Below are positions 28,758 through 44,238 of a stretch of DNA of 44,238 nt, one piece after another. The position numbers and the translations under genes are program-made. Where the stretch lies: contig CDROCS010004985.1 of the NCBI GenBank assembly GCA_977020255.1, positions 1-44,238 of the forward strand, written 5' to 3'. How positions within the stretch are numbered: the stretch's first letter is position 1; each line of letters opens with the position of its first letter. The notes under the pieces were generated by a model, which saw nothing but the letters and a program-made list of their open reading frames with translations, did not search any database and was not told where the DNA came from. The DNA comes from Obrimoposthia wandeli (Eukaryota).

Positions 28758-28777
28758 ATATATATATATATATATAT
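28758..28777. repeat. (TA)n microsatellite
   Basis: About 10 TA units. Confidence 0.9.
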
Positions 28778-29370: not shown

Positions 29371-29474
29371 TTGGCAAAGAATATATATTTATATTACTTT
29401 TGTTTATAGTAAAATACAAGAACACACACTAAAATCAATATTTATTAAACTTTCTTCTGTCCTTCAGTAATTCT

Positions 29475-29783
29475 TCAAATAAGCTTCTGTCTCCCGAGTC
29501 TATCGACTTTGAAACCTTGAAATTGAACAAATAAAATCCTATATTTGCTTTCTGGAAATTCTTCTTCAGAGTAATTATATATTCTTGTGAACAGATGTTC
29601 ATCAGCTTTAATAAAAGTACTAAAGTTTTCAATTTTGATATCCGATTTCATTCTTTTGAAAATAGCATTGGTATTATTAATGTCCGTTTGATGGATCCTT
29701 GAGATGACATAATCAAACTTAGACTTTGTTAGCATAACAGGATATTTTAATCCCAAGGTAACAGGCATCTTGAGGAAATTCAT
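29475..29783 (-). CDS. Hypothetical element protein, 102 aa
   Basis: Open frame with an ATGA start/stop overlap with the upstream ORF, the same coupling seen elsewhere in the element. No recognised motif. Confidence 0.35.
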   Translation of the reverse strand: MNFLKMPVTLGLKYPVMLTKSKFDYVISRIHQTDINNTNAIFKRMKSDIKIENFSTFIKADEHLFTRIYNYSEEEFPESKYRILFVQFQGFKVDRLGRQKLI

Positions 29784-29962
29784 TGTATAGGTGAAATAAG
29801 GTACAGATTCTTTAAATAAGTCTTCTTTTCTCCATTAAAAATTTCTTCTAATTCTGTATCATCATCAGAATCTATCGGAATTGGGTTAACTTTGGTTGTA
29901 TTTAAAATTTCATTCTTCCTCTTCTTCGTGCTCTTCAAAATCGATTTTTGTAAATTGAACAT
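29780..29962 (-). CDS. Hypothetical element protein, 60 aa (basic patch plus acidic DSDDDTELEEIF)
   Basis: ATG start, divergent from the 30087 gene. No recognised family. Confidence 0.35.
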   Translation of the reverse strand: MFNLQKSILKSTKKRKNEILNTTKVNPIPIDSDDDTELEEIFNGEKKTYLKNLYLISPIQ

Positions 29963-30086
29963 GATGAATGAGAGTAAACTGAAATGTTTCGGTAGTTATA
30001 GTTGACTACTTGAACTAAATTGCTTGATTCTCATTGGATAATATTAAACTATATATGTTTGTGACATCATCAATTATTATCATGCA

Positions 30087-30313
30087 ATGAAAATAATCAA
30101 TATAAATTATAAAGGTAAATTTAAGCGAAGTAATAGTCACTTACCTTTTCGATCAAAGAAACCTATACAATATGTTGAAAAGTTAAAGGATTACACTATA
30201 GTTATATTTCCATCAGGTATTATTATTATTACTATTACTATTATTACTGCTACTATTTAGGCTCATGTATAATTATGGGTTGCAAACAACCAATCAAACA
30301 TGCTCAAATATAG
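30087..30313 (+). CDS. Single-repeat TBP-like protein, 60 aa, spliced (exons 30087-30216, 30261-30313)
   Basis: MKIININYKGKFKRSNSHLPFRSKKPIQYVEKLKDYTIVIFPSG/SCIIMGCKQPIKHAQI. 30/55 identical, without gaps, to the N-terminal repeat of the 42356-42882 protein. Same 130-nt first exon and phase-1 GT-AG intron (44 nt). Confidence 0.75.
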
Positions 30314-30578
30314 AAATTGAACTTATTCAACTTCTACGTCGGAACCATCAACATCGGCTGCACCTCCTCCCAAAAAGTTGCGACAACTATTGCCAAAACC
30401 TGAGGGAAGGACAATTGCTACAAAGCAACCGGTGAAGCTGAAAAAGAAACCGGGCCGGCCAAAGAAGAAGGAACCAGTACCGCTTTCTCCTATAATACTT
30501 AGTCGGAGGGATTACGACCCGAATGATCCCAATGATGACTTCGTAAAGATGTTTAAAAATATAATTTATAAACATTAG
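30300..30578 (+). pseudogene. 92-codon Ser/Thr-rich, AT-hook-like basic protein with one in-frame TGA (codon 7)
   Basis: MLKYRN*TYSTSTSEPSTSAAPPPKKLRQ...KKKPGRPKKK...; ATG at 30300 is in the frame of track ORF 30378-30578; TGA at 30318-30320. Confidence 0.55.
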
Positions 30579-30773
30579 TTTCATATGTTTTCTTCTTAAT
30601 ATTTATTTTTTTAAATGTAGAAATACTATCTTTAAGTTTATTTGCAATGATAAGTTATAGATTTATTAAACACTCATTTGATAAATAAAAATATATCATT
30701 TAATTGGATTAAAAAATATCTTTAATTTATATATATAGGTTCAAATTTATTAACCTTTTCATAATTAAAAAAA

Positions 30774-31103
30774 ATGGAATTCATTAAAATGAAGAGTCTG
30801 GTGACGAAGATTGAAGCAAACATCAGAATAAATGAGAAGAAAGGGGACTTAAGAAAGAGGATCCTCAACCAGAATTTATATACTGCTGTCGCGACCGAGT
30901 GGAATCGTCGGGTGGAGATTCAGGACAGGCGGCTAGCAGAACGACGTCATGTTGTGGAGTGGAACAAGAAAATCGAAATGGAAAAAAGGAAGGTGGAGGA
31001 AAAAAGAAGAGAAGAGACGGAGGATGTTCGGCGAGCAGCAAGAAAGCGAATCCTCCAGATTAAACCAGAAGAGGGTCCTTCCACAAAAAAATTAATTTTA
31101 TAG
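30774..31103 (+). CDS. Hypothetical highly charged coiled-coil protein, 109 aa
   Basis: ATG start, E/K/R-rich composition, TATA-like sequence ~40 bp upstream. Confidence 0.6.
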   Translation: MEFIKMKSLVTKIEANIRINEKKGDLRKRILNQNLYTAVATEWNRRVEIQDRRLAERRHVVEWNKKIEMEKRKVEEKRREETEDVRRAARKRILQIKPEEGPSTKKLIL

Positions 31104-31227
31104 ATTATTATTTTGTCTTTATTGATTATGTTATAAATTGTCTAAATACTACCTCGTCATTTTAATAAATTTTTGATTAATAGTTTTTCGTTATAAACAA
31201 CGGGATTTGCTACAGATTTGGGTAATT

Positions 31228-31716
31228 ATGCAGGAATATATCATATATTTTGAGGCTTTCATTAACAAAAATGGGGATTATATTATAAAAGAATTATGTA
31301 TTATGGATGTATGCGACGTTTTTCATCCTTTGCATTTCATATTTCATATAGATATCCCATTTAAAAGTTTAGATTATAAGAAAAAATTTACTAATTTATA
31401 TCTAACTAAATATTTCCATTTATTAAAATGGAAAGAAGGACATAAGGCTTTTTGTGAAATATGTATTTTCGATACTATTAAATCTAATTTTGAAATTGAA
31501 AATGGAATTTTTTATGTTTTAGATGACATGGATGGCAAAAAATATAAGACTTTAAAAAAATATTTTTCTAAATTGAGGTTGAATACTTTAAATATTTCAC
31601 GGGATCATCTATTAAATATTCCACAAAATATTTGCTGTCCATATCGTAATCATGGTGACCATTGCGCATATAAAAAATGTTTAAGTCTTTCTTATTATTA
31701 CTTGACATGTAGATAA
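31228..31716 (+). CDS. DnaQ/DEDD-fold, Maelstrom-like protein, 162 aa
   Basis: IIYFEAF...IIKELCI (beta-1/2; first catalytic Asp replaced by Tyr), H..F, YFHLLKWKEG (HGL.W..G-like), and C-terminal CPYRNHGDHCAYKKC (C..H....CA zinc pattern). Likely ATG at 31228. Confidence 0.6.
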   Translation: MQEYIIYFEAFINKNGDYIIKELCIMDVCDVFHPLHFIFHIDIPFKSLDYKKKFTNLYLTKYFHLLKWKEGHKAFCEICIFDTIKSNFEIENGIFYVLDDMDGKKYKTLKKYFSKLRLNTLNISRDHLLNIPQNICCPYRNHGDHCAYKKCLSLSYYYLTCR

Positions 31717-31980
31717 ACAATTCTTCTAATTGGAGGAATTCTATATTAAAATTTTACATTTATTTACAAATAAGCCTTTTGATTAGAGGAATAAATTTTT
31801 TTTCAAAATTTAATATATGAATAATCCTTTTCTTTAATTGGAGGAATAAAATTATTTTTTCAACCTATAATAGATTAACAATCCTTCTCTTTAATTGGAG
31901 GAATAAAATTATTTTTTCATCCAATAACAGATAAACAAACCTTCTCAGTGGAGGAATAAATTCAATTTTTTAATCCAATA
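31715..31980 (+). repeat. Degenerate tandem array, 5 units of ~53-57 bp, core (TT)GGAGGAATAAA
   Basis: Cores start at 31732, 31785, 31840, 31897 and 31950 (spacing 53, 55, 57, 53). Ends ~30 bp before a TATATAAG at 32010. Confidence 0.9.
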
Positions 31981-32057
31981 GGAAAAGAGCATGTGTGCAT
32001 AAATTTTAGTATATAAGCAAACACTTTCTTCATTTAAATCCCCGACAATTTGAAATA

Positions 32058-35000
32058 ATGCCTATGGTAAGAATTTATTTTTATTATTTCCTTATTAATA
32101 TTTATTATTTCAGATTACGTGTAACCTATTCCCTGAGTATTGCGGTGCTTCGGCTCTGCATGGAGGAGAGTCCTGCATGGAGACAATGTCTGCATACTAC
32201 CGGACCAAGTCTCAAGGTGTTCTGTTCTTCGTCTGCCCCTTCTGCAGAACAATGGAGGAGAAGGAGTTTCGAGAATTCTTCTGTGAACATCGAGCTCACC
32301 TATCGTGTTTCACGGCCAACAACAAGAAGAGGGATATCGTCCAATTGGTGCGCGATTCGCAGGCCGCTCGAGCTCCACCTCCATTTACAGTGGCAGTCAG
32401 TCTACCAGTTTATGGTCCTGCCATTGGTCCTTCTCTCCCGGCTCCTGATTCTGCTGCTGCCCCATCCACTCAAATGTCTAACAATGAGTGGATGAACGAC
32501 ATCTCCGAAGAAGATTTTGAGGAATTGGCACCAGCAACCCAATTCTCAAACAATGACTGGATGCGAAATATCACCCAGTCAGATTTCGAGATGGAGCAGC
32601 CTCAATGGAGCGATAACTCATGGTTGGAGACCATCGAGGAATCCGATTTCATCGAGTCAACGGACGACAGGTGGATGGATTCCATCAATGAAGAGGACTT
32701 CGTTCCAGCTCAACTTGGATTGTCTTCATTAGGTATTTTTTTATTTTTGTAAATTGTAATTATATATTTTATTTTTAATATATATATTTTATTTTTATTT
32801 TTTATTCAGGAAATACAGTTCTACAATCGTCATCTGCTACAACAGATATGCCTCCACCATCGCGAGTGCCTACATCGATGTTAGCACGTCTTAGTAGTAA
32901 TAATTTTTAAAAATATATTTATTTTTTTAATATATTTATTTCAGCAGCACTAACTTCTACAACAGCCGCTTCTTCATCGGAAAGGTCAGCGGTCCCTTCA
33001 ACATCATCTACAGTTGCCTCAACATCGGCAGCATCACCAATAGCAGCACCTTCAACCTCAGCTGCGATTGTCTCAACTATTAATATAAATAGTTGTCTTC
33101 CCGTTCAATTAGGGGGAGGTTTGTCAGCGACAAACGGAAGAAAGAGGCGAGGCCAATTTCTTAATAAGGTCCCACCCAAAAAACGTAAAGAAAACGGTGC
33201 TACTATAGAGTATCACCTAAATAATAAATATGTTATAGTTAAGGTTCCATTAGGAAATGAAATTTTATTAAACGTAGGTGTAGATTCAAATATTGAAAAT
33301 CTTTTAAAATCAGAAGTGACTAAATTAGGACAGGCTAAGGTTCAATTTTGCGCAACAGTGCAGTTTAAAAATGTCAATGAGGAAACTAAAACTTGGGTCA
33401 TTTCACATAAAGCAACTGTTTTTTATGATAATTTTGTAACTGAAATTGGAAGAAACCTGGATGAAAAAATTGCTAATTATAGTGAGTTAAGTAGTGGATG
33501 GACTCTAGTTAGAATTCACGATGTTAGCTTTGTTCTAACAAAGTTCACTGACATGATATATCTTCCGGGGAGTTCAAACATTCCTTCACCTAGATCTCTT
33601 CAACTTTCACGTTCCATTGTTAACGTACAAAACAGCGATAACCTTTGCTTTCTGTATAGCGTGTTGGCCATCCTCAAAAGGGATGTAATTACTGAGCATA
33701 GAGAGCGTGTCAGTAAATATACCCCTTTTTTAAATGAATTGCAGTATCATGGAATAGATTTTCCTGTTAAATTAACTGCGATATCAAGATTTGAACATCT
33801 TAATAACTTGAGTATTAATGTATTCAAATATAATACTGATATCCCAGTTAATGTAACAGATGAAGAAATTTTTAAAAATCCTTTTGTAGATGTAATTTAT
33901 AGGAGCAAAAATGAGTGGACTCAGGTCAACTTAATTTTGCTCGAACAGAATAATAAATTCCATTATGCTGCAATTCCCAGTTTAGATCGTCTTCTAAATT
34001 TAGATAATGGAGCCTTACCGGTTAGGATAAGGTGTAAGTGGTGTCATAGATGTTTGCATGGGTTCCGATCCGAGCTCTCTTACAGCAAACATCTGACATT
34101 ATGTTCACTGAATCCTGATGACAATACGCTATATAGCATGCCTAAGGATAAGGATTTAAAATTAAGGGATTGGGCAAAATGCATACCCATGGAATTCAGG
34201 GTGTATGCAGATTTTGAGTCAATTTTAGCATTGCACGACCAGTATGAGAGTATTCACCTACCGGCTTCGGCAGGACTACTATTCTTAGGCCCCAATATTA
34301 CCCAGTATCATAAATTTTCCGGTCCAAATTGTATTTTAGATTTTATGTTAAAATTAGAGGAATTAGGAACAACAATTGTCAAACCGTGGTATGATCTCAA
34401 TGCTCATCAAGAAATGATCATGATAGGCATAGACTGGGTTAATTTTAATTCTTGTAGATTATGTTATTTGTGTGGAACCCAGTCTAAGTTAGTCAGAGAT
34501 CACGATCATGTTACGGGGCGATACTTGGGAGCGGCGTACAACCTTTGTAACCTTGGCCGTTGTCTCCCTAAAAAACCACGCATTCTCATCGTGTTTCATA
34601 ATCTCAAAGGATATGATTTGCATCATATACTTAAATACGCGTTGGGTACATTAAGCTCTTGGGAAATTTCATGTATACCTCAAACTTCAGAGAAATATTT
34701 ATCTTTAACTGCATATACTGAATTCTGTAGTTTAAGATTCATAGATTCTCTGCAGTTTTTGAGCGGGTCTTTAAAAAATTTAACGGCATCTTTAAATGCA
34801 TGGCCAATTACACAGTCAGTGTTCCCAGCTTCGGTTAACGATAAGGGGATTTTTCCGTATAAATTTGCGAAATCTTTCGCAGATTTAGAAAATACAACTG
34901 AAATCCCACCCATAACTGAATTTGAGGGTGTAAGTCTTCAAGACTATAATGAGGCCCGTACATTTTGGGTGAATAATTGTCGAAATCTTCTCGAATATAT

Positions 35001-36495
35001 GCTTTATTATATGAAGTTAGACATTTATCTTTTAGCTGATCTTTTTGAGTCCTTTCGTGTAAAGTCTTTAGCAGAAGATGGGCTAGATCCCATGCATTTC
35101 TTTAGTTTACCTGGTCTTTCATGGGCAACAGCAATAAAAACTCTTAAAATTAATATCGAGTTACTGCAAGATCCCGCGATGTATCAAATGTATGATTATG
35201 GTATACGCGGTGGAATGACTTTTGTCAACAAACATCATGTTGTCAAAAATCAATCCACGGAGATTCTGTACATCGATATTAATAATTTGTATGGGTGGGC
35301 GCTTACTCAACCTCTACCTCATGCCAACTTTAAGTGGGTTTATGATGTGGATCAGTTGAATAAGTTGATGACAGATTTGGCTACTGTTGATACAGTTTCA
35401 TCCGACGTCGGCTATTTGGTTGAGGTGGACATAAAAATCCCTCCCAATGTGCATGATAAATTAGATGATCTTCCAGTAGCGCCTGTTCATCAATGCCCAC
35501 CTAATTCAAAGGTTAAGAAATTATTGTTAACCCATGAAGACAAGTTGAATTATGTTGTGCATTGGCGGATTCTTCAATTCTACTTAAAGTTGGGAGCAAA
35601 AGTTACTCGAATTCATCGTGCTATAAGCTTCAGTCAAAACTTTGTGTTTAAAGACTATATTGAGAAGAATTCAAGAAAACGTAATTTGGCCACTAACAAA
35701 TTCGATCGAGATTTTTACAAGTTAAAAAGTAATAGTCTCTTTGGAAAAACTGTAGAGGACTTGCGGAAACGTATTTGTCTACGGTTTTGCAATGATGAGC
35801 GTAAACTAATAACATATACTAGCAAGTACAACTTCAAGCGTAGTTTTACAATTGCAGATGACTTGGTAGCAGTGTTATTAGGAAAACAGAGTATTTGTCT
35901 CGATCGACCGAGTTATATAGGTCAAACGGTTTTAGACATTTCTAAACTCAGAATGTATGAGCTTCAATACATAGAATTGGAGAAATACCGACAAGAATTT
36001 AATTATGAGATCAAAATCGCGGCAGGGGACACTGACTCTTTCTTTTTAGAATGTAGGAATGTTAGTTTAAATAATCAATTATTACCAGCAATGTTTAGGG
36101 ACAACTTACTAGATATCCATAAATATCCCGCTAACCATCCTCTACACTCTATGAGTTTAAAGGACATTATCGGGAAATTTAAGGATGAAAGCGAGGGACA
36201 GGTTTCGTATGATGATTGTATTTTCCTACGCCCTAAATGCTACAGTTTACATGCATCTAATAATACATGTTCAATGAGAGCAAAGGGTGTGGGAAGAAAC
36301 AATCTTACACATGAGGCCTACCGGAAAGTTTATGATACTGGGTGTATTGAAAGCGTTGAGCAAACTAGATTTATTTCAAGAGCCCATCAACTGTATTCCC
36401 ATAAATCAACAAAAATCGCTTTGAGTAGTAATGACGACAAGCGCTTTTGGGTAGAAAAGAACGCTAGCCTGGCTTATGGACACTTCAGAATTTAA
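32058..36495 (+). CDS. POLB: Protein-primed family B DNA polymerase with spliced N-terminal leader (exons 32058-32066, 32114-32732, 32810-32896, 32945-36495; predicted 1421 aa)
   Basis: ExoI VYADFES, ExoII FHNLKGYD, ExoIII YMKLDIYLL, PolA YIDINNLYGWAL, PolB KLKSNSLFGK, PolC GDTDS; endonuclease-VII-like insert VRDHDHVTG...YNLCNL. Confidence is ~0.97 for the 33121-36495 core and lower for the spliced leader (three GT-AG introns of 47, 77 and 48 nt, all preserving frame). Confidence 0.9.
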
Positions 36496-36769
36496 ACGGT
36501 TTTCATTTTTTGATTTTTTTAGTTTAGTTTTTTAAAATTTTACATCCTTATGGCACTTAGACTCTAACTTATTTGTTATTTCGATACTTTTTTAGGATGG
36601 ACCTTATTTATTATGCCTTATCTTTGCTGACATATCTCATTGTGATGTTGTGATTAATAAATGTATTAAAAAAATTGTCTTATGTCTTTTATTATTTTAC
36701 TCTTATATTTTTAGAAATTTAAAAAATAATTCAAAATAAAACATTTAAAATTTTTATTTTTATAACACA

Positions 36770-37150
36770 CTAATTGTTTTGCAACGATAACCATAAAATA
36801 CATAAATGTCCACAGTTTCTCGTCGCAGGATCCTGATATTGTATCTTGTTGTAAAATACTCTTCTTCGTCCTTTTTGAATAGTTGAAACAAGTTTGTGTG
36901 GATAATACATTGCAAGTGGATCAAATACATGTATTGTCCACTCTCTAACATAAATAGCTATCCAATGTTCTCCTGGTAAATTCGAAGTATGAGTATTGAT
37001 AATGTAACCTCCAGATTGAAAAAATGGAATCATATCAATAGGATAAACTCCATTGAATTTATCACCCAGGACCTTCTCTGCTGATTCTTTTACTTGTTTT
37101 GAACTCAATAAAAATTAATAAATATAAATTTAAAATATGTCTTACTCCAT
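36770..37150 (-). CDS. PRO: Adenoviral-type (adenain/Ulp1-like) cysteine protease, 112 aa
   Basis: GEHW (His), VFDP (Asp), YQD (oxyanion Gln), NCG (Cys). The track start is TTG. A 42-nt intron 37145-37104 (GTAAGA...TTGAG) would give an ATG start MDSKQVKE; the acceptor is an atypical GAG. Confidence 0.9.
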
Positions 37151-37151
37151 T

Positions 37152-38381
37152 CTATAATATGACAGTTCTGTTTTTATTGATTTGTATTTCCGAATCAAAT
37201 ACTCCGTAAATAAGCACCGTAGTAGGATTTGTTAAAGCTGCATTGAACTTAATTTCTAGTCGTAAATTTCCATCCTTTGGTAGTTGGCATTGGTTTATAT
37301 CAAAGTCTGGTGCCAAAACAAATGTGAAGAACGGGCAGCTGTTTTTAAAGTCAGTGAAAGAAATACCATTGTTCATATTTTTATCTAGTTGACCCAAATT
37401 TCGAATAATAGATTGGGCATAAGCCAAAGCATAAGCGTTACCTTCGAAATCTGTTTTATATGTTTCACGATAATCAGTATTTCTTGAAAGTGTCACTGAA
37501 CCAACATTAAGATTGTCAAATTGAGTTGCATCTGTCGTATAATTTCCTAGAAACTTTGCAGTTTTTTGAAAAGAAATTAAAATGAATTTCGGTAATCTTA
37601 CATCACCAAAAATTTGATCCTTATTAAAAGCTTGTGTACCCGTACCTAAAGAATAAGATATAAGTTTAGTTTCTCTAATAGGATAACAAGCATTGTTTTT
37701 TTCCATTCCTATATTATGTGCCATTAAAACTGATTGTTCGGTTTTAACTCTTCGGACATACAATTTTGCATCCAAAATATCAAGTCTAGGTTTTAGAACG
37801 TCTGTGCTTATCAAAGAAAAATTCCATTTATTACGTTTCAAACGAAGATGTACATTAACACCGGGAATTAAATATTTCGGTTGTTCAAAGAAATTCAATC
37901 TCAAAGACTCACACATTTCGTAAGCTTTAGAACCTGCAATCCATTCTTTGCGAGTTGCATCAGTTTTATCATAACCAATGGTTGCCAAATTAGTATTTTG
38001 AGTATCAGTACTATAATTCAAAAGACTTTCAATCAAAGCTTTATGAGCATAGGAAGAATTTCCACCTTCAATTTTGACATTATTAAGAGTAACAATGGCA
38101 TCATTAAATAAAGAATTAAATAGATAATTTATAGGTGTTACATCGGCATTTTCATCTAAATTAGTACCATCCCGATTTAATACTTTTATTTGAACATAAA
38201 GCAAAGTATCATTCAAATCTAAATACTCGCTATTGGAACCATTAATATTAATTTCTAAATCGGTTAAAGTGGTTCCTGAAACTGAGTTAACAAGGAATAT
38301 TTCTTCAAAGGAAGCATTATCTACAACTACTTGTGGAAGCGGTTTATCAAGAATACATAATTCAGTTTTGGCGCAACTCAT
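37152..38381 (-). CDS. PY: Double jelly-roll major capsid protein, 409 aa
   Basis: Typical Polinton MCP sequence (start SCAKTELC.., EYLDLNDTLLYV, end GNLRLEIKF...V.IYG.F...I.I). Located between core protein and protease. Confidence 0.9.
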   Translation of the reverse strand: MSCAKTELCILDKPLPQVVVDNASFEEIFLVNSVSGTTLTDLEININGSNSEYLDLNDTLLYVQIKVLNRDGTNLDENADVTPINYLFNSLFNDAIVTLNNVKIEGGNSSYAHKALIESLLNYSTDTQNTNLATIGYDKTDATRKEWIAGSKAYEMCESLRLNFFEQPKYLIPGVNVHLRLKRNKWNFSLISTDVLKPRLDILDAKLYVRRVKTEQSVLMAHNIGMEKNNACYPIRETKLISYSLGTGTQAFNKDQIFGDVRLPKFILISFQKTAKFLGNYTTDATQFDNLNVGSVTLSRNTDYRETYKTDFEGNAYALAYAQSIIRNLGQLDKNMNNGISFTDFKNSCPFFTFVLAPDFDINQCQLPKDGNLRLEIKFNAALTNPTTVLIYGVFDSEIQINKNRTVIL

Positions 38382-38755
38382 TTTGCAAATATTGTTCCTT
38401 CAACTTTCTTACGTTTATTTATATTAATTTTTAGCTTCTTTTTACTTTTAAATCCACTACCTCCTTGGCTTTTATTTGATTTACGTTTTCTAATCAAATT
38501 AGCAACTTCAGGTAAAACATTATCAAGTTCATCAAGCGCATGCTTCTTAAAAGTTGGTATTGGTTTATTGTCATTAGATGAAAGGTAATCCTTTCCTAAT
38601 TTTGATATAAATCGCCCGAGTCTCTTTAAAAGAGGAAAGGCAAATCTACCTAATGTTCTAAGCCAGCCAGATCCGTATTGTTTACCAACAAAATATGGTA
38701 ATTCTCCACCTTGTTGGCTTTGACTATAAGCTTCAATTATTGCTGGATTCGCCAT
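38378..38755 (-). CDS. Small virion core / membrane-active protein (pVI/pVII-like; 'cupiennin-like' in adintovirus descriptions), 125 aa
   Basis: Protease-type sites QQGG, QYGSG, QGGSG; amphipathic helix WLRTLGRFAFPLLKRLG; basic tail; ATGA overlap with MCP. Confidence 0.75.
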   Translation of the reverse strand: MANPAIIEAYSQSQQGGELPYFVGKQYGSGWLRTLGRFAFPLLKRLGRFISKLGKDYLSSNDNKPIPTFKKHALDELDNVLPEVANLIRKRKSNKSQGGSGFKSKKKLKININKRKKVEGTIFAK

Positions 38756-39794
38756 TTTGTTTTCTTAAATGTATTGTTAAACTTGTCTTGGCCTCGTACG
38801 TGAAATCTATTAGTTGTCTGGAATCATCTCTAATATTTACTTCAATATTGTTTATAGAAAAGAGAGAAACTGGAAGATACATTGGTTGATCTATACACAT
38901 ACCGACAGTGTCCCCATCTCTAGTTTCATTTTTAGATATCCATATTGTTCTCAAAAGTGGAACTCGCTGTCCTCCTACAAGCGTTGGTTCTATTAAATTA
39001 GTATAAATATATAAATGATTAACAGCATTTAAAAGTTTTGCCTTATTTTTAGCTTTTATGGTTTATATTGTATGGGTTTCAAAGGTATTTCTGTTTAAAC
39101 CAAGGTTTTTAGCGAGTTTATCATCAAATGAAACTCGTTTTATATTGCTCTTTACTGTAAATGTTAATTTACCATTTAATGTTTCACATTTATCCAAATA
39201 TTCACTACATTCCTTATATATTAATTTACAGAAATTCACTTCACTATCTATTTTATAATCTTTTGAAAACGTTTTCAGTTCCACTACATACTTTGGTCTC
39301 GTTTCAACTAAAAACACTTTTGTTACTCTATCAGGAACATTTTTAAACGATTTAGATGAGGCTATATCAGATCTCTTCATACCTACTACATGTCCACTGT
39401 CAAACCCGAATTGAAGAGCTTCTCTATCAGATCTAAATATAATTTGTATAGGTTTTAAAAAATGTTTTAGTCTATTTTTAAATCTGACTTTGTTTTTTTC
39501 ATATATTACTTTCACTTCTTTATCTATACAATTGTAATAGAATTTTCCTTTACTATCAAACCCAATCACAACTTCAATTGATTTTTCATGATCAACTTCT
39601 TTTGTAAACGAAATATGTGAGTTTTTTCTGATAGTAATTGGAGAATAATAAAAGGAAAATTCTGTTAAAGCCGCTTCCCATTCTCCTTGGAGATTTATAA
39701 AATTTTCCCAATCGATAATAAAGCTACTAGCGTAATTATCTGGTTGAGTCTTCGGACATCTGTTACTAGGTAAAACCATATACATAGACTTCAT
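38733..39794 (-). pseudogene. PX: Minor capsid protein (penton), 353 codons with one in-frame TAA at 39063-39065
   Basis: N-terminus YMVLPSN...PDNYAS.F.......L.GEWEAALTE; C-terminus LYIYTNLIEP..VG....PLLR...MY.PV....I..IEV.IRD. Track ORFs 39063-39794 and 38733-38954 are the same frame across a single stop. Confidence 0.9.
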
Positions 39795-40813
39795 ATTATA
39801 TTAGATGCTGATATCCAAGTTGGATCTGAATAACCATGCCATTTAACATATGTTTACGTTTACCGGCACCCTTAGATTTTAATATTTTTTGAATATGGAA
39901 AACGCTAGGTTTATTTGATATTACTTGTTGTTCTTGCTCGAAAAATTTACCGTGAACGATATTATTGTCAGCATCTTTAATAGTATACATTATTGGATTA
40001 CTCTTTTGATCAATTTTACTTATACAAAATATTTCATCGCTCCAATTCTGATCAAAGTTTTTAATAAATGGAGTAGAGCTAATTTTCGAAATTCAAACAT
40101 ATTCGTTTTTCTTATATTTAGCTTTTTTAATATTTTCTTTTTTATTCCTGTTCATCCAAATATCCATAGAATTTTTATTAGTAACATCAACAGGTCTCAT
40201 TTCTTTTGAGACCTATATGTTCCGAGTGATTATAGGCATGTATTATTTTAGGTAAAACTTGGATCCATTTTTTATTTCCTTCTTTTGTGAAATACTTTTT
40301 TATTCGATCTCTTAGAGTACGATTAAATCTTTCTACTACTGCTGCTTTGTATTGTGAAAACACAGAGTAATGATTTATATTATTTTGTTTGATTTATATT
40401 ACTTGCTTATTATAAAATTCTTTTCCTAAATCAGTTTGCACATTTTGGGGAATGTCCTCTTTTAATATTTCTTTAATGGCTTCAAGCATAGCTATTGAAG
40501 ACTTTGCTTTAACTGGAATTGCACGAGCAAACCTGCTAAATACATCAATACATGTTAAAATATATCGATATCCCTTATTAATGGAAGAATATGGGATCAT
40601 CTCCATCAAATCCATTTGCCATAAATTATTAGAACCGCTGGTTTTGTAAGCTCTAGTTGGAAACCTTCTTCTCATCGGCTTGTTCAGACTGTAGGCTAAC
40701 TGGTCGCTCAGCCATTTCTGCGTTTTCTTGTAATTTTGTTTTGTTCTTTTTGCTAATTTTGAAACTCCTGTGTAGCCAATTGGATCTTTTGGATTGAACC
40801 ATATCTTCTCCAT
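39791..40813 (-). pseudogene. INT: Retroviral-type (rve) integrase with C-terminal chromodomain, disrupted
   Basis: D (WQMDL), D (QTDLG), E (VVERFNRTL); chromodomain tail YVKWHGYSDPTWI. Lesions: TAA 40394-40396, +1 shift ~40204-40207, TGA 40093-40095 in YV(R)ISK, -1 shift ~39852-39855. ATGA overlap with penton start. Confidence 0.92.
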
Positions 40814-40871
40814 TACAACAATTTGAATATAAAGAAAATTTAAGTTTAGGTAAAGAAGGGCTAGCACCCAT
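40653..40871 (-). CDS. Overprinted 72-aa ORF with N-myristoylation-like start (MGASPS) and a CC pair
   Basis: ATG 58 nt upstream of the integrase ATG in another frame; open through the integrase 5' region. Confidence 0.4.
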   Translation of the reverse strand: MGASPSLPKLKFSLYSNCCNGEDMVQSKRSNWLHRSFKISKKNKTKLQENAEMAERPVSLQSEQADEKKVSN

Positions 40872-40899
40872 ATCTTTAGCTGATTTTAGAAATAATTGT

Positions 40900-41228
40900 T
40901 TATGAACGTGTCGCAGCTATAATACTACTGATAATTGAAGCAACAACTGGAATAACAGCCCCTATGAAACCACCATTCTGTTTAAGAATAATATTTCGTT
41001 TCCTTTTTTACTTTTTACATTAGCAATATCTAGAAGAGTTTTTCTATATTTCTTTAATATATTTTTCCGATTTCCAACTTTTACTCGACCCAAAACTATA
41101 TTATACAAAACTTCCAATAAATCATCTACAACAAAGGATGGAAATGCTTTAAGAATAATCATTCTCTTATTAGAAGAGGCTTTGACTAAAGCTTTAAAAT
41201 AGGGTATGCTTCTTTGTATTTTCTTCAT
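40900..41228 (-). pseudogene. Conserved small Polinton virion protein (helical, QxGGF site plus hydrophobic C-tail), 1-nt frameshift
   Basis: Adding one A to the A6 run (plus T6 at 41004-41009) gives 109 aa ending KRKRNIILKQNGGFIGAVIPVVASIISSIIAATRS. Confidence 0.75.
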
Positions 41229-41259
41229 TTTAATAAAAAAGGTTCAATTTAAATATTGT

Positions 41260-41399
41260 TTATATTCGAAGCCATTTAAGTTTTTTTTTATTTTTAACTA
41301 TAGATTTGATTAATTTTTTCACTTCTATTTTCTTAATGACTTTTTTTTTGATTTCTTAGATTTTACTTTACGTTTTACTATCAACTTTGTAAAAGGCAT
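41260..41399 (-). pseudogene. Small Lys-rich basic protein, 46 aa if a 1-nt frameshift is restored
   Basis: MPFTKLIVKRKVKSKKSKKK|VIKKIEVKKLIKSIVKNKKKLKWLRI; needs one extra A in the A9 run (plus 41341-41349). Confidence 0.55.
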
Positions 41400-41406
41400 T
41401 GCGAAT

Positions 41407-42053
41407 TTATTTTTTATAATTGTTCTCTATTTGTTTATAAACAGTTACTCCCTTAGAATTAAATATGTCTGTTAAAACACGTAAATCATCTGGGCAAGCT
41501 TGTGTAAAGTCAATAAATATATACCCATGTGCTTGTTTAGCAGCATCGTGGAATGAATCAACTAGGAAGTTCTTATTTTGAGGAAATGCTTGTCTGGCCA
41601 CAAAATCAACAACTGTTTGATCTCTAGGATTTTTAAATAAAACTAAGTAATGTACATTAAGATTTCTTGTTCTATGGTGACCTCCTTGGTGAAACAGATT
41701 TTGAGTGATAAATATAACTGTAACTTCACGATGTCTTGCAATCTTTGTAAATAAATTATTAAAGTCCGATTCCTTGTTAGCCTCCTCATACAAATCATCA
41801 ATTATTATTACATCTTCTTTTTCAATCTTTCACACCAATATGCATCAAATCCTTCAATAAATTTTATACCCTTCAACTTGCAAATTTCTGTTTTGTTTAA
41901 ACCGCTTTGTCCTCCTACACCATGATGCCAATAAATATTTTTGAAACTAGATTTGAAAAGAGATTCATTTTGCAACAATTTACAGACGAAATGTGTCTTT
42001 CCACTTCCACTTGGGCCAACTATTTGAAATACAGCATTATTATTTAGCTCCAT
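41407..42053 (-). pseudogene. ATP: A32/FtsK-like packaging ATPase, 215 aa if a 1-nt frameshift is restored
   Basis: Walker A GPSGSGKT; Walker B VIIIDDL appears after adding one A to the A5 run (plus 41818-41822); RHREVTVIFITQNLF; R-finger RTRNLN. Confidence 0.92.
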
Positions 42054-42090
42054 TGCATATACTCTTTCATTTTTAATATTGTTTATATTA

Positions 42091-42372
42091 TCATAGAAGT
42101 TTCCTTATTGAAATGTACATTGTTAGAGCTATTGTAGATGAAATACAAAAATTAATTAATGAATATTTGGCTATAATTTTATTTATTTGTGTACGATTTC
42201 TAAATTCTCGAATAACGTGTGATCTAACCAATATTTCAATGTTATCTCTTGTTATATCATTATTTTTTAATTCTGATAAAATTTCTTTACCCCTAATTTT
42301 TCCAGAAAATATTTCATCGGCAAGCCGATCCACTTCATTGTCTCTATTTATAGTATTATTCATTTGAAACAA
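42091..42372 (-). CDS. Hypothetical protein, ~90 aa, with hydrophobic C-terminal segment
   Basis: Overlaps the TBP-like stop and is co-oriented with the structural module. C-terminus YSLINFCISSTIALTMYISI is TM-like. Confidence 0.55.
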   Translation of the reverse strand: MFQMNNTINRDNEVDRLADEIFSGKIRGKEILSELKNNDITRDNIEILVRSHVIREFRNRTQINKIIAKYSLINFCISSTIALTMYISIRKLL

Positions 42373-42882
42373 TAATTTTAAACGGTTTGTTTATAGAAAA
42401 TATGTAATAAGATATATTTTCTAAAATCAAATCAACAAAGTTTGGATAATCAAAAATTTTCAATCCCAATATCATAACTTTACCACTGGAAAATATATTT
42501 ACACATAGAGGTTTAAACTTCAAATAACTGAGAGCAGGAAAAATTTCTGGTTCAAAGATGCATTCTTCTTTCATTTTCTCTGCAGTTTTAAAAAGATTTA
42601 TCTGTTTCCCGAGATTAGCCGAAATCGTGATTGATTGTATTGCAGTGATTTGAATTCCAAATGGTAAATTGAACCCAAGCATTGGTATTTTGCATCCCAT
42701 AACACGACAATTTCCTAAAGAATTCAATATAAAAATAAAATAAAAAACTAACCTGTAGGAAAATTAACAACTGTGAAATTGTCAAACTTTTCTACATATT
42801 GTCTCGGCTTCCATTCATTGAATGGTAAGTACGAAACATCATCTTCTGTTCTACCTTTATAATTTATATTTACGAGTTTCAT
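42356..42882 (-). CDS. TATA-binding-protein-like protein, 162 aa, spliced (exons 42882-42753, 42714-42356)
   Basis: Repeat 2 IQSITISANLGKQINL...FEPEIFPALSY..KPLCVNIFSSGKVMILGLK aligns to TBP IQNMVGSCDV.FPIRL...YEPELFPGLIYR..KP.IVLLIFVSGKVVLTGAK. Repeat 1 MKLVNIN...TVVNFPTG/NCRVMGCK aligns to LQNIV...TALIFSSGKMVCTGAK. The intron CAG|GTTAGT...CTTTAG|G is 38 nt. Confidence 0.85.
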
Positions 42883-42884
42883 TA

Positions 42885-42920
42885 GACTGAAATTGTATTC
42901 TGTAAAATCTTCTTTATATA
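42885..42920 (-). promoter_or_regulatory. TATA + initiator core promoter of the TBP-like gene
   Basis: Minus-strand TATATAAAG at 42920-42912 and TCAGTC at 42890-42885 (A+1 is 32 nt from the TATA start), the arthropod-type Inr at canonical spacing. Confidence 0.65.
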
Positions 42921-43021
42921 TGTCTGAACCTGCTTTTTTATTGCACGTTTCTTGTAATTATCTTGCAAACCTATTATAATTGGATGCTATATTTAGTCCA
43001 ATCAAATTCAATGCTTTTGTT

Positions 43022-43095
43022 ATATTAACCAATGAGATTCATGTTTTTGTTAGAAATTAGTATAAAAGAATGCGCCATTGGAGGACAAATCATAG
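43022..43095 (+). promoter_or_regulatory. CCAAT-containing 19-bp motif plus TATAAAAG promoter of the 43099 gene
   Basis: ATATTAACCAATGAGATTC (43022-43040), TATAAAAG (43061-43068), TCA at +31 (A at 43092). Confidence 0.55.
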
Positions 43096-43098
43096 TAA

Positions 43099-43575
43099 AT
43101 GCATTCATATCAAAGACAATTATCAACAATGGACGATAGCCAACGGGTATTAAGCGATGACGAAGAAATGTTTGAAGAATCGGATAAGGATATGTATGAA
43201 GAAGTGAAACAATATTTCAAATACAAAGTCAGATTCTTGAAGAAGGCTCAGCTGATTGCTTTAGTAAATCCTGTGACAATTGAAAGAAGAAAGTTCAGCT
43301 ACTATCTATCAGGTATTCAAAAACCTGATTTTCAATATCTTAAACAGAAAATAGAAAAGGCAGTTCCGAATTTTACTTTCAATAAGAACGAATTTTATAT
43401 CCGAGGAGCCGATGAAGCATTTCTAGATGACTATGGAAGATATGTTGATATTGATGCGTTTCCGAAAAAGAAGCAATGGACTCTAACAATTCGACTTTAT
43501 GGTTACAAGAAAGATGAAATGGGAACAAAGTTGCCTATGTGGAAAATTGAACGTGCTCATATTTCTATGTTTTAA
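43099..43575 (+). CDS. Hypothetical protein, 158 aa (148 from ATG 43129), paralog of 43709-44113
   Basis: Shares L...Q.I...NPV.I, DF..LK, F.DD.G and W...IRL.GY..D..GT..P.W with the next gene. Confidence 0.75.
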   Translation: MHSYQRQLSTMDDSQRVLSDDEEMFEESDKDMYEEVKQYFKYKVRFLKKAQLIALVNPVTIERRKFSYYLSGIQKPDFQYLKQKIEKAVPNFTFNKNEFYIRGADEAFLDDYGRYVDIDAFPKKKQWTLTIRLYGYKKDEMGTKLPMWKIERAHISMF

Positions 43576-43708
43576 CTTTTGTGTGTAATAAATTGTAATC
43601 GGTTTTACTATGTTTCTTTCATTTAATAATCAGTTTTATTTGTATCTTATTTGTATCTTATGTGTATTTTTTATAAACATTGTTTTTAATCAGTTTCCTT
43701 ATTTTAGA

Positions 43709-44113
43709 ATGGATAAAAGATGTGTAGCAAATTTTTATTATCCAGAAAGAATATCAAAAGGAAAACTGTGTAATATATTAACGAGGCATCAAATTATACG
43801 AGTTATGAATCCTGTGAAAATATCAAAAGTGCAGAAAAAATATCTCATCGAAATTTTAACAACAACTGATTTTGATCAACTGAAAAATATTTTGGGATTT
43901 TACATTCCTGATTATGTATATGAAGGAAATTGTTTCGAGCTTGAAACTGATCCCAGTCTGGATTTTAAAGATGATCTAGGATATTTGATTGCTCCAATTC
44001 TAGATGAAGAACTATGGAATATCTCAATACGTCTGAATGGATATTTTGCTGATGACGGGACAATGCAGCCTCTCTGGACTTTGAGTGAAGCCAATATGTT
44101 GTTTTATGTTTAA
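43709..44113 (+). CDS. Hypothetical protein, 134 aa, tandem paralog of 43099-43575
   Basis: The track start 43610 reads through T-rich intergenic or intron-like DNA; likely start MDKRC at 43709. Followed directly by AATAAA. Confidence 0.75.
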   Translation: MDKRCVANFYYPERISKGKLCNILTRHQIIRVMNPVKISKVQKKYLIEILTTTDFDQLKNILGFYIPDYVYEGNCFELETDPSLDFKDDLGYLIAPILDEELWNISIRLNGYFADDGTMQPLWTLSEANMLFYV

Positions 44114-44238
44114 TAAATATTTTGAAAAATAATTTTGTCTCGTATTTTGTTTTTGCTCCTCTAAATTATATAGATCTGACCGATGTTTTTCGTGCCTTTA
44201 GATCAAGAATGAAGCAAGCCCCTAAGGGGCGGGCGGAG

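What the first reader, a model, noticed from the sequence alone, without database searches (positions are those of the whole stretch)
42356..42882. A Polinton/Maverick encoding its own TBP-like protein
Seen: a spliced 162-aa two-repeat protein. Three of the four DNA-kinking Phe positions are kept (FPTG, EIFPA, IFSSG), as are the acidic TFIIB-contact stirrup (FEPE) and the repeat-1 Asn; repeat 2 has Ser for Asn and repeat 1 is shortened. It heads the minus-strand structural gene cluster and has its own TATA+Inr promoter. Established: TBP is not part of the canonical Polinton core gene set, though large nucleocytoviruses encode TBP homologues. Whether it has been reported in this group was not checked. 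Inference: an altered-specificity basal factor redirecting host Pol II to element promoters.
Basis: partly seen in the sequence, partly recalled or inferred. Interest (0 to 1): 0.9.

Follow-up and report, generated by a model that had tools for sequence, protein, structure and literature searches.

The report
Miniature TBP gene in a Polinton
A virus-like Polinton/Maverick element carries an intact, spliced gene for a shrunken TATA-binding protein that a whole clade of such elements conserves, and it probably steers host transcription onto the element's unusual TATAAAC promoters.

Summary
Window 42356..42882 (-) is a two-exon gene with a 38-nt GT..AG intron, encoding 162 aa.

- **Fold.** Exon 2 passes Pfam TBP (E 3.4e-11). 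A 40-member family profile aligns end to end with cellular TBPs (hhalign 99.7%). An AlphaFold model of a relative (pLDDT 94.6) has only TBPs as its top 44 PDB matches.
- **Residues.** Every residue claim holds and is family-wide. Three of the four Phe, the repeat-1 Asn and the E-P-E-x-F stirrup are kept. Repeat 2 has Ser for Asn. Repeat 1 lacks its stirrup and both helices.
- **Context.** The gene is not a stray host capture. About 60 cluster representatives and more than 45 metagenomic or genomic loci carry it, always in Polinton synteny: pPolB, rve integrase, A32-like ATPase, adenain-like protease. Pairwise dN/dS is 0.11-0.33.
- **New here.** Most other element genes have TATAAACA 30-39 nt before the ATG (60 observed against 4 expected). 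The TBP-like genes have canonical TATA boxes, often with CCAAT boxes, instead.
- **Inference.** This fits a host-then-element cascade, which is not shown.
- **Prior report.** Only a "TBP" label in a map legend (Starrett 2021).

This copy sits in a partly decayed element. Novelty: new variant of a known kind.

The parts
42356..42882 (-). TBP-like gene: two exons, 162 aa, intact
42753..42882 (-). Exon 1: the miniature repeat 1 (strand S1 with Asn5, no helix H1, no stirrup, F41)
   Evidence: Aligns to the N-termini of the unspliced relatives P0003, P0004 and P0005. tblastn with family proteins ends at 42751.
42715..42752 (-). 38-nt spliceosomal-type intron, GTTAGT..CTTTAG, phase 1
   Evidence: The paralogue at 30087..30313 has an intron in the same codon and phase. 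Relatives are contiguous across the site.
42356..42714 (-). Exon 2: last strand of repeat 1, short linker, complete repeat 2 with the E-P-E-I-F stirrup, and the stop codon
   Evidence: Pfam TBP E 3.4e-11. AF2 pLDDT 91.3. 2.2 A rmsd over 84 columns to human TBP 1cdw_A.
42886..42920 (-). Core promoter of the TBP-like gene: TATATAAA (42920..42913) and TCAGT initiator-like motif (42890..42886)
   Evidence: Canonical TATAWAWR is present upstream of 18 of 43 relatives' TBP-like genes.
42883..43128 (.). Divergent intergenic region between the TBP-like gene and the p158 gene, with four CCAAT/ATTGG pentamers and a second TATAAAAG facing the plus strand
   Evidence: CCAAT/ATTGG occurs upstream of 12 of 43 relatives' TBP-like genes.
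42091..42372 (-). 93-aa ORF overlapping the end of the TBP-like gene; ATAAACAA lies 31 nt before its first ATG
41407..42053 (-). A32-like packaging ATPase, broken (one frame change)
   Evidence: Walker A motif and a weak Pox_A32 hit. 76-83% aa identity to relatives' ATPases, which pass Pox_A32. Break count.
40962..41228 (-). 88-aa conserved small gene
39797..40871 (-). rve-type integrase, broken (two frame changes and two in-frame stops)
   Evidence: Pfam rve E 1.4e-9. Relatives are 351-357 aa, with rve at 49.5 bits. Counts; bounds.
38760..39794 (-). Homologue of the relatives' 346-aa protein, broken (one in-frame stop)
38378..38755 (-). 125-aa conserved gene (function not tested)
37152..38381 (-). 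409-aa conserved protein, intact. It is the major-capsid candidate by size and position only.
   Evidence: 160 homologues at E<=1e-10. No Pfam or PDB sequence match.
36770..37108 (-). Adenain-like (Peptidase_C5) protease
   Evidence: Weak in the window (E 0.032). Relatives score 34.8 and 28.2 bits, above the cut-off.
32058..36495 (+). Protein-primed family-B DNA polymerase gene: the long ORF 33121..36495 plus apparent upstream exons from 32058
   Evidence: DNA_pol_B_2 E 1.3e-29. The upstream exons are read from the sequence only. A homologue of that upstream part lies in the gene upstream of PolB in L052.
31778..31946 (+). Three 57-nt tandem repeats, each with ATTGG, upstream of a TATATAAG box that precedes the polymerase gene's first exon
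31228..31716 (+). Cys/His-rich ~162-aa protein (p169 family), usually linked to the TBP-like gene in relatives
   Evidence: No Pfam or PDB match.
30087..30313 (+). Truncated second TBP-like copy: about 60 codons, repeat 1 only, with a 44-nt intron in the same codon
29475..29962 (-). Diverged paralogue of p158; together with the truncated TBP copy it forms an inverted duplicate of 42680..43611
43099..44113 (+). Two ORFs (158 and 167 aa). The first belongs to a family that flanks TBP-like genes in relatives; the second had only one short match in the loci (L017). The element runs off the window beyond them.
   Evidence: The TIR-bounded relative L052 has about 4 kb beyond its TBP-like gene.

Best explanation
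**What it is (shown).** An intact, spliced 162-aa gene for a miniature TATA-binding protein. It is a conserved accessory gene of one clade of Polinton/Maverick elements.
- Repeat 2 is a complete TBP repeat.
- Repeat 1 is cut down to about 50 residues: four beta strands, no stirrup, no helices.

**How it most likely works (inferred).**
- The beta-sheet saddle still binds and bends AT-rich DNA using three intercalating Phe.
- The unchanged acidic E-P-E-x-F stirrup of repeat 2 still docks host TFIIB, and so RNA polymerase II.
- The protein lacks the repeat-1 stirrup, which is the TFIIA site in cellular TBP, and the convex helices of repeat 1, which are a regulator-docking surface. It would therefore act outside TFIID and its regulators.
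- Repeat 1 reads the 3' half of a TATA box in cellular TBP. Here it is remodelled on its DNA face: the stirrup Phe is lost, Val is replaced by Arg47, and Thr by Met49. The element's own promoters differ from the canonical box in exactly that half (TATAAAC-A, with C at position 7).

**Proposed cascade.** Host TBP and CCAAT factors transcribe the mini-TBP gene from its canonical TATA/CCAAT/Inr promoter. The mini-TBP then nucleates initiation at the TATAAAC promoters of the ATPase, the capsid candidate and other element genes.

**This copy.** Its element is partly decayed, so this copy may no longer take part in any cycle.
For: **Fold and family**
- Pfam TBP E 3.4e-11. All 35 PDB sequence hits are TBPs.
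- The family profile against canonical TBPs gives hhalign 99.7%, E 1.4e-26, over 151 columns covering the whole length.
- AF2 of relative P0009: pLDDT 94.6, pTM 0.85. Its secondary structure shows four strands and no long helix in repeat 1.
- Foldseek: the top 44 PDB hits are TBPs (E 1e-9 to 7e-7, TM about 0.7). The next fold is at E 0.06.
- Model of the window's own exon 2: pLDDT 91.3, 2.2 A to human TBP.

**Conservation**
- E98, E100, F102, F118, F41, N5, S71 and M49 are in 40 of 40 family members. R47 is in 39 of 40.
- The stirrup F-P-G is deleted in 40 of 40.

**Selection**
- 37 intact CDS; dN/dS 0.11-0.33 for pairs with dS 0.1-2.0.

**Linkage to Polinton genes**
-. Hallmark domains pass Pfam cut-offs in relatives. 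The relative L052 is bounded by TIRs about 17.3 kb apart.

**Promoters**
- An unbiased 8-mer scan found TATAAACA 60 times in 265 upstream windows, against 4.25 expected.
- 82 of 211 ATAAACA sites have an ORF start 30-39 nt downstream.
- ATAAAC is present upstream of 17/17 ATPase, 8/13 p409, 8/12 p88, 10/16 p169 and 4/8 p243 genes, but only 2/43 TBP-like genes (Fisher p about 6e-13). The TBP-like genes carry TATAWAWR in 18/43 and CCAAT in 12/43.
- In the window, 10 of 16 ATAAACAA sites lie in the element, all on the coding strand.

**Precedent**
- Beta- and gamma-herpesviruses use a viral TBP mimic for non-canonical late TATT promoters (PMC4893493, PMC7498053).
Against: - No binding, expression or structural data exist. 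DNA binding, TFIIB contact and specificity are all inferred from homology.
- TATAAAC still contains TATAAA, so host TBP could probably use it without help.
- The promoter split is not clean. Some probably early genes, such as the MATH genes and the gene upstream of PolB in L052, have GTATATAAAC. The protease, p125 and integrase genes rarely show the motif.
- No control set of related elements lacking the gene could be obtained.
- The full-length model is of a relative that is 44% identical to the window protein over exon 2, not of the window protein itself.
- The stirrup Glu residues would be conserved equally under a decoy model.
- This copy's element has a broken integrase, ATPase and one more gene.
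Confidence: 0.5

Rival explanations
1. Decoy or repressor. The mini-TBP occupies TATA boxes, or sequesters TFIIB, but cannot support full pre-initiation complex assembly because the TFIIA-side stirrup and the repeat-1 helices are gone. It would dampen host or element transcription, for example to keep integrated copies quiet or to shut off host genes.
For: - The repeat-1 stirrup and helices are lost in 40 of 40 members.
- The TFIIB-type stirrup is retained, which a sequestering protein would also need.
- The gene is kept under purifying selection.
Against: - The position-locked TATAAAC motif in front of most element genes, and its near absence in front of the TBP-like gene itself, fit an activator cascade more simply.
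- Archaeal TBPs work with TFB alone and without TFIIA (established knowledge), so losing the TFIIA site does not imply inactivity.
Confidence: 0.2
2. Architectural DNA-bending protein with no role in transcription. The saddle would bend AT-rich element DNA, such as termini or a packaging signal, to help protein-primed replication or genome packaging.
For: - In one synteny type the gene lies directly upstream of the packaging ATPase.
- The saddle and three Phe are conserved.
- The terminal repeats of the relative L052 are AT-rich and repetitive.
Against: - Both surface Glu of the TFIIB/TFB/Brf-binding stirrup are invariant in 40 of 40 members, which would be unexplained.
- The neighbour changes between synteny types.
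- No TATAAAC enrichment at termini was looked for or seen.
Confidence: 0.1
3. A relic in this locus. Whatever the family does, the window's copy is a passenger in a dead endogenous element and has no present function.
For: - Integrase: two frame changes and two stops. ATPase: one frame change. One further gene has an in-frame stop. A second TBP-like copy is truncated.
- No terminal repeats were found inside the window.
Against: - The TBP-like ORF, its splice sites and its promoter motifs are all intact, as are PolB, the 409-aa gene and the protease.
- Some apparent breaks could be unrecognised short introns or assembly errors.
Confidence: 0.2

Closest known systems
Cellular TATA-binding protein (Pfam PF00352; e.g. 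PDB 2z8u, 1mp9, 1cdw, 1ytb)
   Same: - Same fold over the whole length.
- Repeat 2 is nearly canonical, including the E-P-E-x-F-P stirrup and both Phe.
- The repeat-1 Asn and the second Phe of repeat 1 are kept.
   Different: - 136-194 aa with no N-terminal tail.
- Repeat 1 lacks helix H1, the stirrup with its Phe, and helix H2.
- Only one residue of the central Asn/Thr quartet is kept: Asn to Ser in repeat 2, Thr to Met and Thr to Leu.
- An invariant Arg sits on strand S5 of repeat 1.
- It is encoded by a mobile virus-like element, not a host locus.
TBP homologues of nucleocytoplasmic large DNA viruses
   Same: They are virus-encoded TBP-fold proteins and are the best BFVD structural matches, for example Heterosigma akashiwo virus 01 and Mimiviridae sp. 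ChoanoV1.
   Different: - Those proteins are 186-500+ aa with two fuller repeats. Sequence identity is only 9-24%.
- They belong to cytoplasmic viruses with their own RNA polymerase (established knowledge). A Polinton encodes no polymerase subunit seen here and would need host Pol II.
Beta/gamma-herpesvirus TBP mimic (KSHV ORF24, EBV BcRF1, HCMV UL87) and TATT late promoters
   Same: - A functional analogy: a virus-encoded TBP-like factor dedicated to a non-canonical TATA variant in front of late or structural genes, using host Pol II (PMC4893493, PMC7498053, PMC12529657).
- BcRF1- and UL87-family proteins appear as weak structural hits.
   Different: - The herpes proteins are large (440-1000+ aa), need five further viral partners and bind Pol II directly rather than through TFIIB (PMC7498053).
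- There is no sequence relationship. The family here keeps the TFIIB-type stirrup.
"TBP" gene label on MELD-virus maps (Starrett et al. 2021, Virus Evolution, PMC8502044)
   Same: - It is a gene "similar to TATA binding proteins" drawn on maps of mid-size linear dsDNA elements with adintovirus-like PolB.
- The same legends list a TRAF-like gene, and relatives L006 and L052 carry MATH/TRAF genes next to the TBP-like gene.
   Different: Only a legend entry exists, with no text, architecture, residues, distribution or promoters. Which element carries the gene cannot be read from the text held, so identity with this family is likely but unverified.
TBP-related factors of animals (TRF2/TBPL1)
   Same: They are TBP paralogues with altered DNA-contact residues that serve special promoter sets (own knowledge; not retrieved by any tool here).
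   Different: They are host genes with two full repeats. No specific similarity was seen: the best sequence matches to the window protein are archaeal and microsporidian TBPs, not animal ones.

Membership tests
TBP (PF00352) superfamily | A TBP repeat is detectable by the curated profile above its cut-off | tested here: met
   Repeat 2 of the window protein scores 43.3 bits against a cut-off of 22.9. Exon 1 alone gives no Pfam hit.
TBP (PF00352) superfamily | Two tandem repeats forming one saddle | tested here: met
   Whole-length hhalign to canonical TBPs: 99.7%, 151 columns. The AF2 model of relative P0009 aligns to whole TBP chains at TM about 0.7. Repeat 1 is much reduced. The full-length window protein itself was not modelled.
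TBP (PF00352) superfamily | Four DNA-kinking Phe, two per repeat | tested here: not met
   Three of the four are present. The repeat-1 stirrup Phe is deleted in the window protein and in 40 of 40 family members.
TBP (PF00352) superfamily | Central minor-groove Asn/Thr quartet | tested here: not met
   Only the repeat-1 Asn is kept. The others are Ser71, Met49 and Leu126.
TBP (PF00352) superfamily | Acidic C-terminal stirrup that contacts TFIIB/TFB/Brf | tested here: met
   Sequence only: E98, P99, E100 and F102 are invariant or nearly so. Actual binding is not testable here.
TBP (PF00352) superfamily | Sequence-specific binding to a TATA box | not testable with these tools
   Only an indirect sign: the TATAAAC motif is position-locked in front of the element genes.
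Polinton/Maverick | Protein-primed family-B DNA polymerase | tested here: met
   DNA_pol_B_2, E 1.3e-29, in the intact 1124-aa ORF.
Polinton/Maverick | Retrovirus-like (rve) integrase | tested here: met
   rve E 1.4e-9. The gene is broken in this copy (four lesions) and intact in relatives.
Polinton/Maverick | A32/FtsK-like packaging ATPase | tested here: met
   The window pieces have a Walker A motif and a weak Pox_A32 hit. Relatives 76-83% identical to them pass Pox_A32 at 30 bits against a cut-off of 22.8. One frame change in this copy.
Polinton/Maverick | Adenain/Ulp1-like cysteine protease | tested here: inconclusive
   The window ORF gives E 0.032, below the cut-off. Homologues in L001 and L007 pass at 34.8 and 28.2 bits.
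Polinton/Maverick | Double jelly-roll major and single jelly-roll minor capsid proteins | tested here: inconclusive
   The 409-aa family has no Pfam or PDB sequence match.
Polinton/Maverick | Terminal inverted repeats and a target-site duplication | tested here: inconclusive
   None were found inside the window, where the element runs off the right edge. The relative L052 has inverted terminal repeats about 17.3 kb apart. Target-site duplication was not examined.

The most novel reading that the evidence does not exclude
The family is the smallest natural TBP. It would be a self-sufficient initiation factor, independent of TFIID and TFIIA, whose remodelled repeat 1 reads a C-containing 3' half-site (TATAAAC). 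That would give a Polinton clade a two-step transcription programme of its own: a host-driven mini-TBP gene first, then mini-TBP-driven packaging and capsid genes. It would be the first transcription cascade described for Polintons. It would also be a natural experiment showing which parts of TBP are dispensable.
Probability: 0.3. Interest if true: 0.85.

Novelty: new variant of a known kind. Interest (0 to 1): 0.64.

Why it matters
- **Polinton gene expression.** Polintons are seen as the ancestors of, or close kin to, several groups of eukaryotic DNA viruses, yet almost nothing is known about how they control their own genes. A conserved, selected, element-encoded basal factor together with a position-locked promoter motif gives a concrete, testable model.
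- **TBP biology.** The family shows that the repeat-1 stirrup and both repeat-1 helices can be lost while the saddle and the TFIIB stirrup stay under constraint.
- **Annotation.** The M-x-I-V-N-I-N-Y-K-G start and the TATAAAC box are useful markers for this clade in metagenomes.

Tried and rejected
**Searches that found nothing**
- IMG/VR scans for the TBP-like family and for the 409-aa family gave no relatives. As a result, no control set of related elements lacking the gene was obtained.
- Rfam on the whole window gave no match.
- Profile searches of the 409-aa family against PDB gave nothing. The p169 family gave nothing significant against PDB or Pfam. The capsid assignment therefore stays untested.

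**Host identity**
- Exact look-up of the 409-aa product was not on record.
- Pfam on flanking ORFs gave nothing. My first impression of mariner- and RNase-H-like remnants at 24-25.4 kb is therefore unverified and is dropped.
- Two NCBI assemblies carry relatives (GCA_031406105.1 and GCA_965192255.1). Their organisms could not be looked up, and no paper cites them.

**Element ends**
- The inverted-repeat search in 28000..44238 found only the start of the two TBP-like genes, not terminal repeats.

**Not attempted**
- Phylogeny against host, archaeal and giant-virus TBPs. Only about 85 alignable residues are available and the retrieved canonical TBPs carry no taxonomy. Best-hit ranking shows no affinity to animal TBPs.
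- I did not try to decide whether the frame changes in the ATPase and integrase are short introns. That would mean picking stretches to bridge breaks.
- The bacterial promoter/terminator scanner was not used because it is the wrong model for this sequence.
- The full-length window protein was not folded.
Full report
**1. Observation.** On the minus strand an ATG at 42882 opens a 44-codon ORF that ends ...F-P-T-G followed by a stop. A second ORF, 42727..42356, continues with N-C-R-V-M-G-C-K. A 38-nt interval, 42752..42715, starts GTTAGT and ends CTTTAG. Removing it joins the two ORFs in phase 1 inside a Gly codon, giving 489 nt = 162 codons and one terminal stop. The window has no N.

The intron was not picked to bridge a defect.
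- Unspliced relatives from metagenomes (P0003 154 aa, P0004 163 aa, P0005, and locus L005) run straight through the junction. Both window exons align to them collinearly without a gap.
- tblastn with seven family proteins breaks at exactly these bounds.
- A truncated paralogue in the same window (30087..30313, +) has a 44-nt GT..AG interval in the same codon and phase.

The coordinates, length and splice model of the finding are therefore confirmed.

**2. It is a TBP.**
- *Sequence.* Exon 2 scores 43.3 bits on Pfam PF00352 (cut-off 22.9, E 3.4e-11). It matches 35 distinct PDB sequences, all TBPs, the best being Sulfolobus 1mp9 at 1.3e-12, aligned to repeat 2.
- *Family size.* A full HMMER scan of 1.84 billion representatives gave 591 hits at E<=1e-3 and 71 at E<=1e-10. 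The top ~60 are 135-200-aa proteins that start M-x-I-V-N-I-N-Y-K-G like exon 1. Ordinary two-repeat TBPs follow below about 1e-10.
- *Profile comparison.* A 40-member alignment of these proteins (A3) matches PDB TBPs at up to 6.4e-21. It aligns to a 26-member canonical TBP alignment (A5) at 99.7% probability, E 1.4e-26, over 151 columns spanning both repeats.
- *Structure.* AlphaFold2 of member P0009 gives pLDDT 94.6 and pTM 0.85. P0009 is 153 aa and lies in a 16.2-kb contig collinear with the window element. Foldseek against the PDB returns TBPs as the top 44 hits (E 9.9e-10 to 6.7e-7, query TM 0.60-0.72). The next fold is at E 0.06. Against viral models the best hits are giant-virus TBPs.
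- *The window's own protein.* Exon 2 folds at pLDDT 91.3 and superposes on human TBP 1cdw_A at 2.2 A over 84 columns.

**3. Anatomy of the protein.** The model and the profile alignment agree.
- *Repeat 2* is complete: S1', H1', S2'-S5' and H2'.
- *Repeat 1* keeps strand S1 and three further strands. It has only a three-residue helix stub in place of H1, lacks the stirrup turn, and lacks helix H2 altogether. It goes directly from M-G-C-K into the linker.

The table gives the column counts over 40 family members and 26 canonical TBPs.

| Position | Window residue | Family (of 40) | Canonical (of 26) |
|---|---|---|---|
| Repeat-1 Asn | N5 | 40 | 26 |
| Repeat-1 stirrup F-P-G | deleted | deleted in 40 | Phe in 23 |
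| Repeat-1 second Phe | F41 | 40 | Phe in 24 |
| S5 of repeat 1, first DNA-face site | R47 | Arg in 39 | Val in 16 |
| S5 of repeat 1, second DNA-face site | M49 | Met in 40 | Thr in 12 |
| Repeat-2 Asn | S71 | Ser in 40 | Asn in 24 |
| Repeat-2 stirrup | E98, P99, E100, F102, P103 | 40, 38, 40, 40, 39 | E 22, P 23, E 23, F 26, P 25 |
| Repeat-2 second Phe | F118 | 40 | 26 |
| Repeat-2 Thr | L126 | Leu 19, Thr 9, Met 8 | Thr in 16 |

Every residue statement in the finding is correct, and each is a family trait rather than a quirk of this copy.

**4. Context: a Polinton clade.**

The window element carries these genes:
- a 1124-aa protein-primed PolB ORF (DNA_pol_B_2, E 1.3e-29);
- an rve integrase (E 1.4e-9);
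- a Walker-A ATPase whose close relatives pass Pox_A32;
- an adenain-like protease, weak here but above cut-off in relatives;
- conserved 409-, 346- and 125-aa genes.

Linkage of the TBP-like gene to this gene set:
- In every locus long enough to show its neighbours, the TBP-like gene is linked to these same genes. That includes the 42 loci from the metagenome scan and contig JANOGQ010000345.1 of NCBI assembly GCA_031406105.1.
- Two arrangements recur. In type A, as here, the order is [p158-like][TBP][ATPase][88 aa][integrase][346 aa][125 aa][409 aa][protease], followed in most type-A relatives by [p169] and a reverse-strand PolB. In the window the p169 homologue instead lies at 31228..31716 (+), beyond PolB and on the PolB strand. 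In type B the order is ...[409 aa][protease][p169][TBP].
- "Heads the cluster" is therefore true for this copy only.

Other observations on relatives:
- L052 is bounded by inverted terminal repeats about 17.3 kb apart. It contains a MATH/TRAF gene beside its TBP-like gene, as does L006.
- The 409-aa protein has 160 homologues at E<=1e-10, nearly all metagenomic.
- IMG/VR holds none of this clade.

**5. Selection and state of this copy.**
- Thirty-seven relatives have complete CDS of 136-194 aa. Pairs with dS between 0.1 and 2.0 give dN/dS of 0.11-0.33. The "no purifying selection" refutation fails.
- In the window, the TBP-like gene, PolB, the 409-aa gene and the protease are intact.
- The integrase has two frame changes and two in-frame stops. 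The ATPase has one frame change. The 346-aa homologue has one in-frame stop.
- Whether any of these is an unrecognised short intron or an assembly error was not decided.
- The left part of the element (29406..30295) is an old inverted duplicate of 42680..43611. It carries a truncated TBP-like copy and a p158 paralogue.
- The element runs off the right edge of the window, and no terminal repeats were found inside it.

**6. Promoters.**
- *This gene.* It has TATATAAA at -38 and TCAGT ending 4 nt before the ATG. The A of TCAGT lies 32 nt after the first T of the box. Four CCAAT/ATTGG pentamers lie in the 246-bp divergent spacer.
- *Relatives' TBP-like genes.* They show the same layout: TATAWAWR in 18 of 43 and CCAAT in 12 of 43.
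- *Unbiased scan.* I ran an 8-mer scan of -70..-10 before 265 non-identical ORF starts in the window element and all loci held at that point (L001-L049). The top frequent word was TATAAACA: 60 observed against 4.25 expected.
- *Position and strand.* Of 211 distinct ATAAACA sites, 82 have an ORF-opening ATG 30-39 nt downstream. Sites lie on the coding strand.
- *By gene class.* The table shows how many genes have ATAAAC upstream.

| Gene class | With ATAAAC |
|---|---|
| ATPase | 17/17 |
| 409-aa gene | 8/13 |
| 88-aa gene | 8/12 |
| p169 | 10/16 |
| 346-aa gene | 4/8 |
| TBP-like gene | 2/43 |

- The difference between the TBP-like genes and the five other classes in the table pooled gives Fisher p about 6e-13.
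- *Caveat.* The split is not perfect. The MATH genes and the gene upstream of PolB in L052 have GTATATAAAC, and the motif is rare before the protease, 125-aa and integrase genes.
- *The window's polymerase gene.* It seems to start near 32058 with short-intron exons, behind TATATAAG and three 57-nt ATTGG-bearing repeats.

**7. Mechanism.**

*Shown:* fold, conserved residues, linkage, selection and promoter statistics.

*From established knowledge of TBP complexes* (entries such as 1vol, 1ytf/1nh2, 1jfi, 3oc3 and 4b0a appear among the hits; the contact details are from my own knowledge):
- the C-terminal stirrup Glu residues dock TFIIB;
- the N-terminal stirrup docks TFIIA;
- the convex helices of repeat 1 are a regulator-docking surface;
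- repeat 2 reads the 5' half of the TATA box and repeat 1 the 3' half.

*Inferred:*
- The mini-TBP binds and bends DNA and recruits TFIIB and Pol II, but escapes TFIID, TFIIA and TBP regulators.
- Its remodelled repeat-1 face matches the altered 3' half of the element's TATAAAC box.
- A host-transcribed mini-TBP then switches on the TATAAAC genes.

I put this at about 0.5. A decoy or repressor role is about 0.2 and a non-transcriptional bending role about 0.1. Independently, there is about a 0.2 chance that this particular copy is a relic.

**8. Comparison and novelty.**
- It belongs to the TBP superfamily by profile and fold. It fails two classical TBP hallmarks: four Phe, and the Asn/Thr quartet.
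- Its nearest functional analogy is the herpesvirus TBP mimic that serves TATT late promoters (PMC4893493, PMC7498053, PMC12529657). It is unrelated in sequence to that mimic and keeps a TFIIB-type stirrup.
- Giant-virus TBPs are the nearest viral structures.
[quoted passage not shown] 2021.
- The architecture, the distribution, the selection and the promoter dichotomy appear undescribed. The verdict is a new variant of a known kind.

All residue mapping reported here rests on tool alignments.
- Mechanical BLAST tables list match ranges, and the script lists ranges in relatives' residue numbering. These bracket the frame changes of the ATPase and integrase. I also discussed the ATPase junction in my reasoning.

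Noticed in passing
window 30087..30313 (+) and 29406..30295 against 42680..43611: A second, truncated TBP-like copy (about 60 codons, repeat 1 only) has an intron in the same codon. It forms part of an old inverted duplication together with a diverged p158 paralogue. The duplication is 70% identical in nucleotides over 212 nt.
   Followed up: partly
window 29400..42394; loci L005-L025, L050, L052: A position-locked, strand-specific TATAAACA box lies 30-39 nt before most gene starts of this Polinton clade. This implies 5' leaders of only a few nucleotides.
   Followed up: yes
window 31778..31946 and 32000..33121 (+): Three 57-nt tandem repeats, each carrying ATTGG, lie upstream of a TATATAAG box. 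The polymerase gene appears to begin near 32058 with several exons separated by short AT-rich GT..AG intervals. Those exons encode a Cys-rich stretch, acidic D-W-M repeats and a Ser/Thr/Ala-rich linker.
   Followed up: partly
window 31228..31716 (+); alignment A6: A conserved ~160-aa Cys/His-rich protein family has invariant C24, H64, C76, C137, H142, C146 and C151. It sits next to the TBP-like gene in type-B relatives and has no Pfam or PDB match. It is a candidate zinc-binding partner or regulator.
   Followed up: partly
L006 854..1858 and 5476..6447; L052 3952..4941: MATH/TRAF-domain genes lie inside the relatives' elements, within the terminal repeats in L052 and beside the TBP-like gene. 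This echoes the TRAF and TBP labels in the Starrett et al. 2021 map legends.
   Followed up: partly
L052 4989..5463: This relative's TBP-like gene is split into two frames by a ~37-nt interval at a different position from the window's intron. It may be another very short intron or a frameshift.
   Followed up: no
window 33121..36495 (+), residues about 160-190 and 444-478 of the ORF: The polymerase ORF has an N-terminal Cys-protease-like motif (not tested) and a weak Endonuclease_7 hit (E 0.0068, below cut-off).
   Followed up: no
window 43099..43575 and 43610..44113 (+): Two adjacent ORFs of similar size, 158 and 167 aa. The 158-aa one has homologues that flank TBP-like genes in L006, L011, L012 and L016-L018; the 167-aa one had only one short match in the loci (L017). 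Neither has a Pfam match.
   Followed up: partly
window 1..29000: The flank is AT-rich (24-41% GC per kb) with only short ORFs and no Rfam or Pfam hit in the ORFs tried. The host organism could not be identified.
   Followed up: partly
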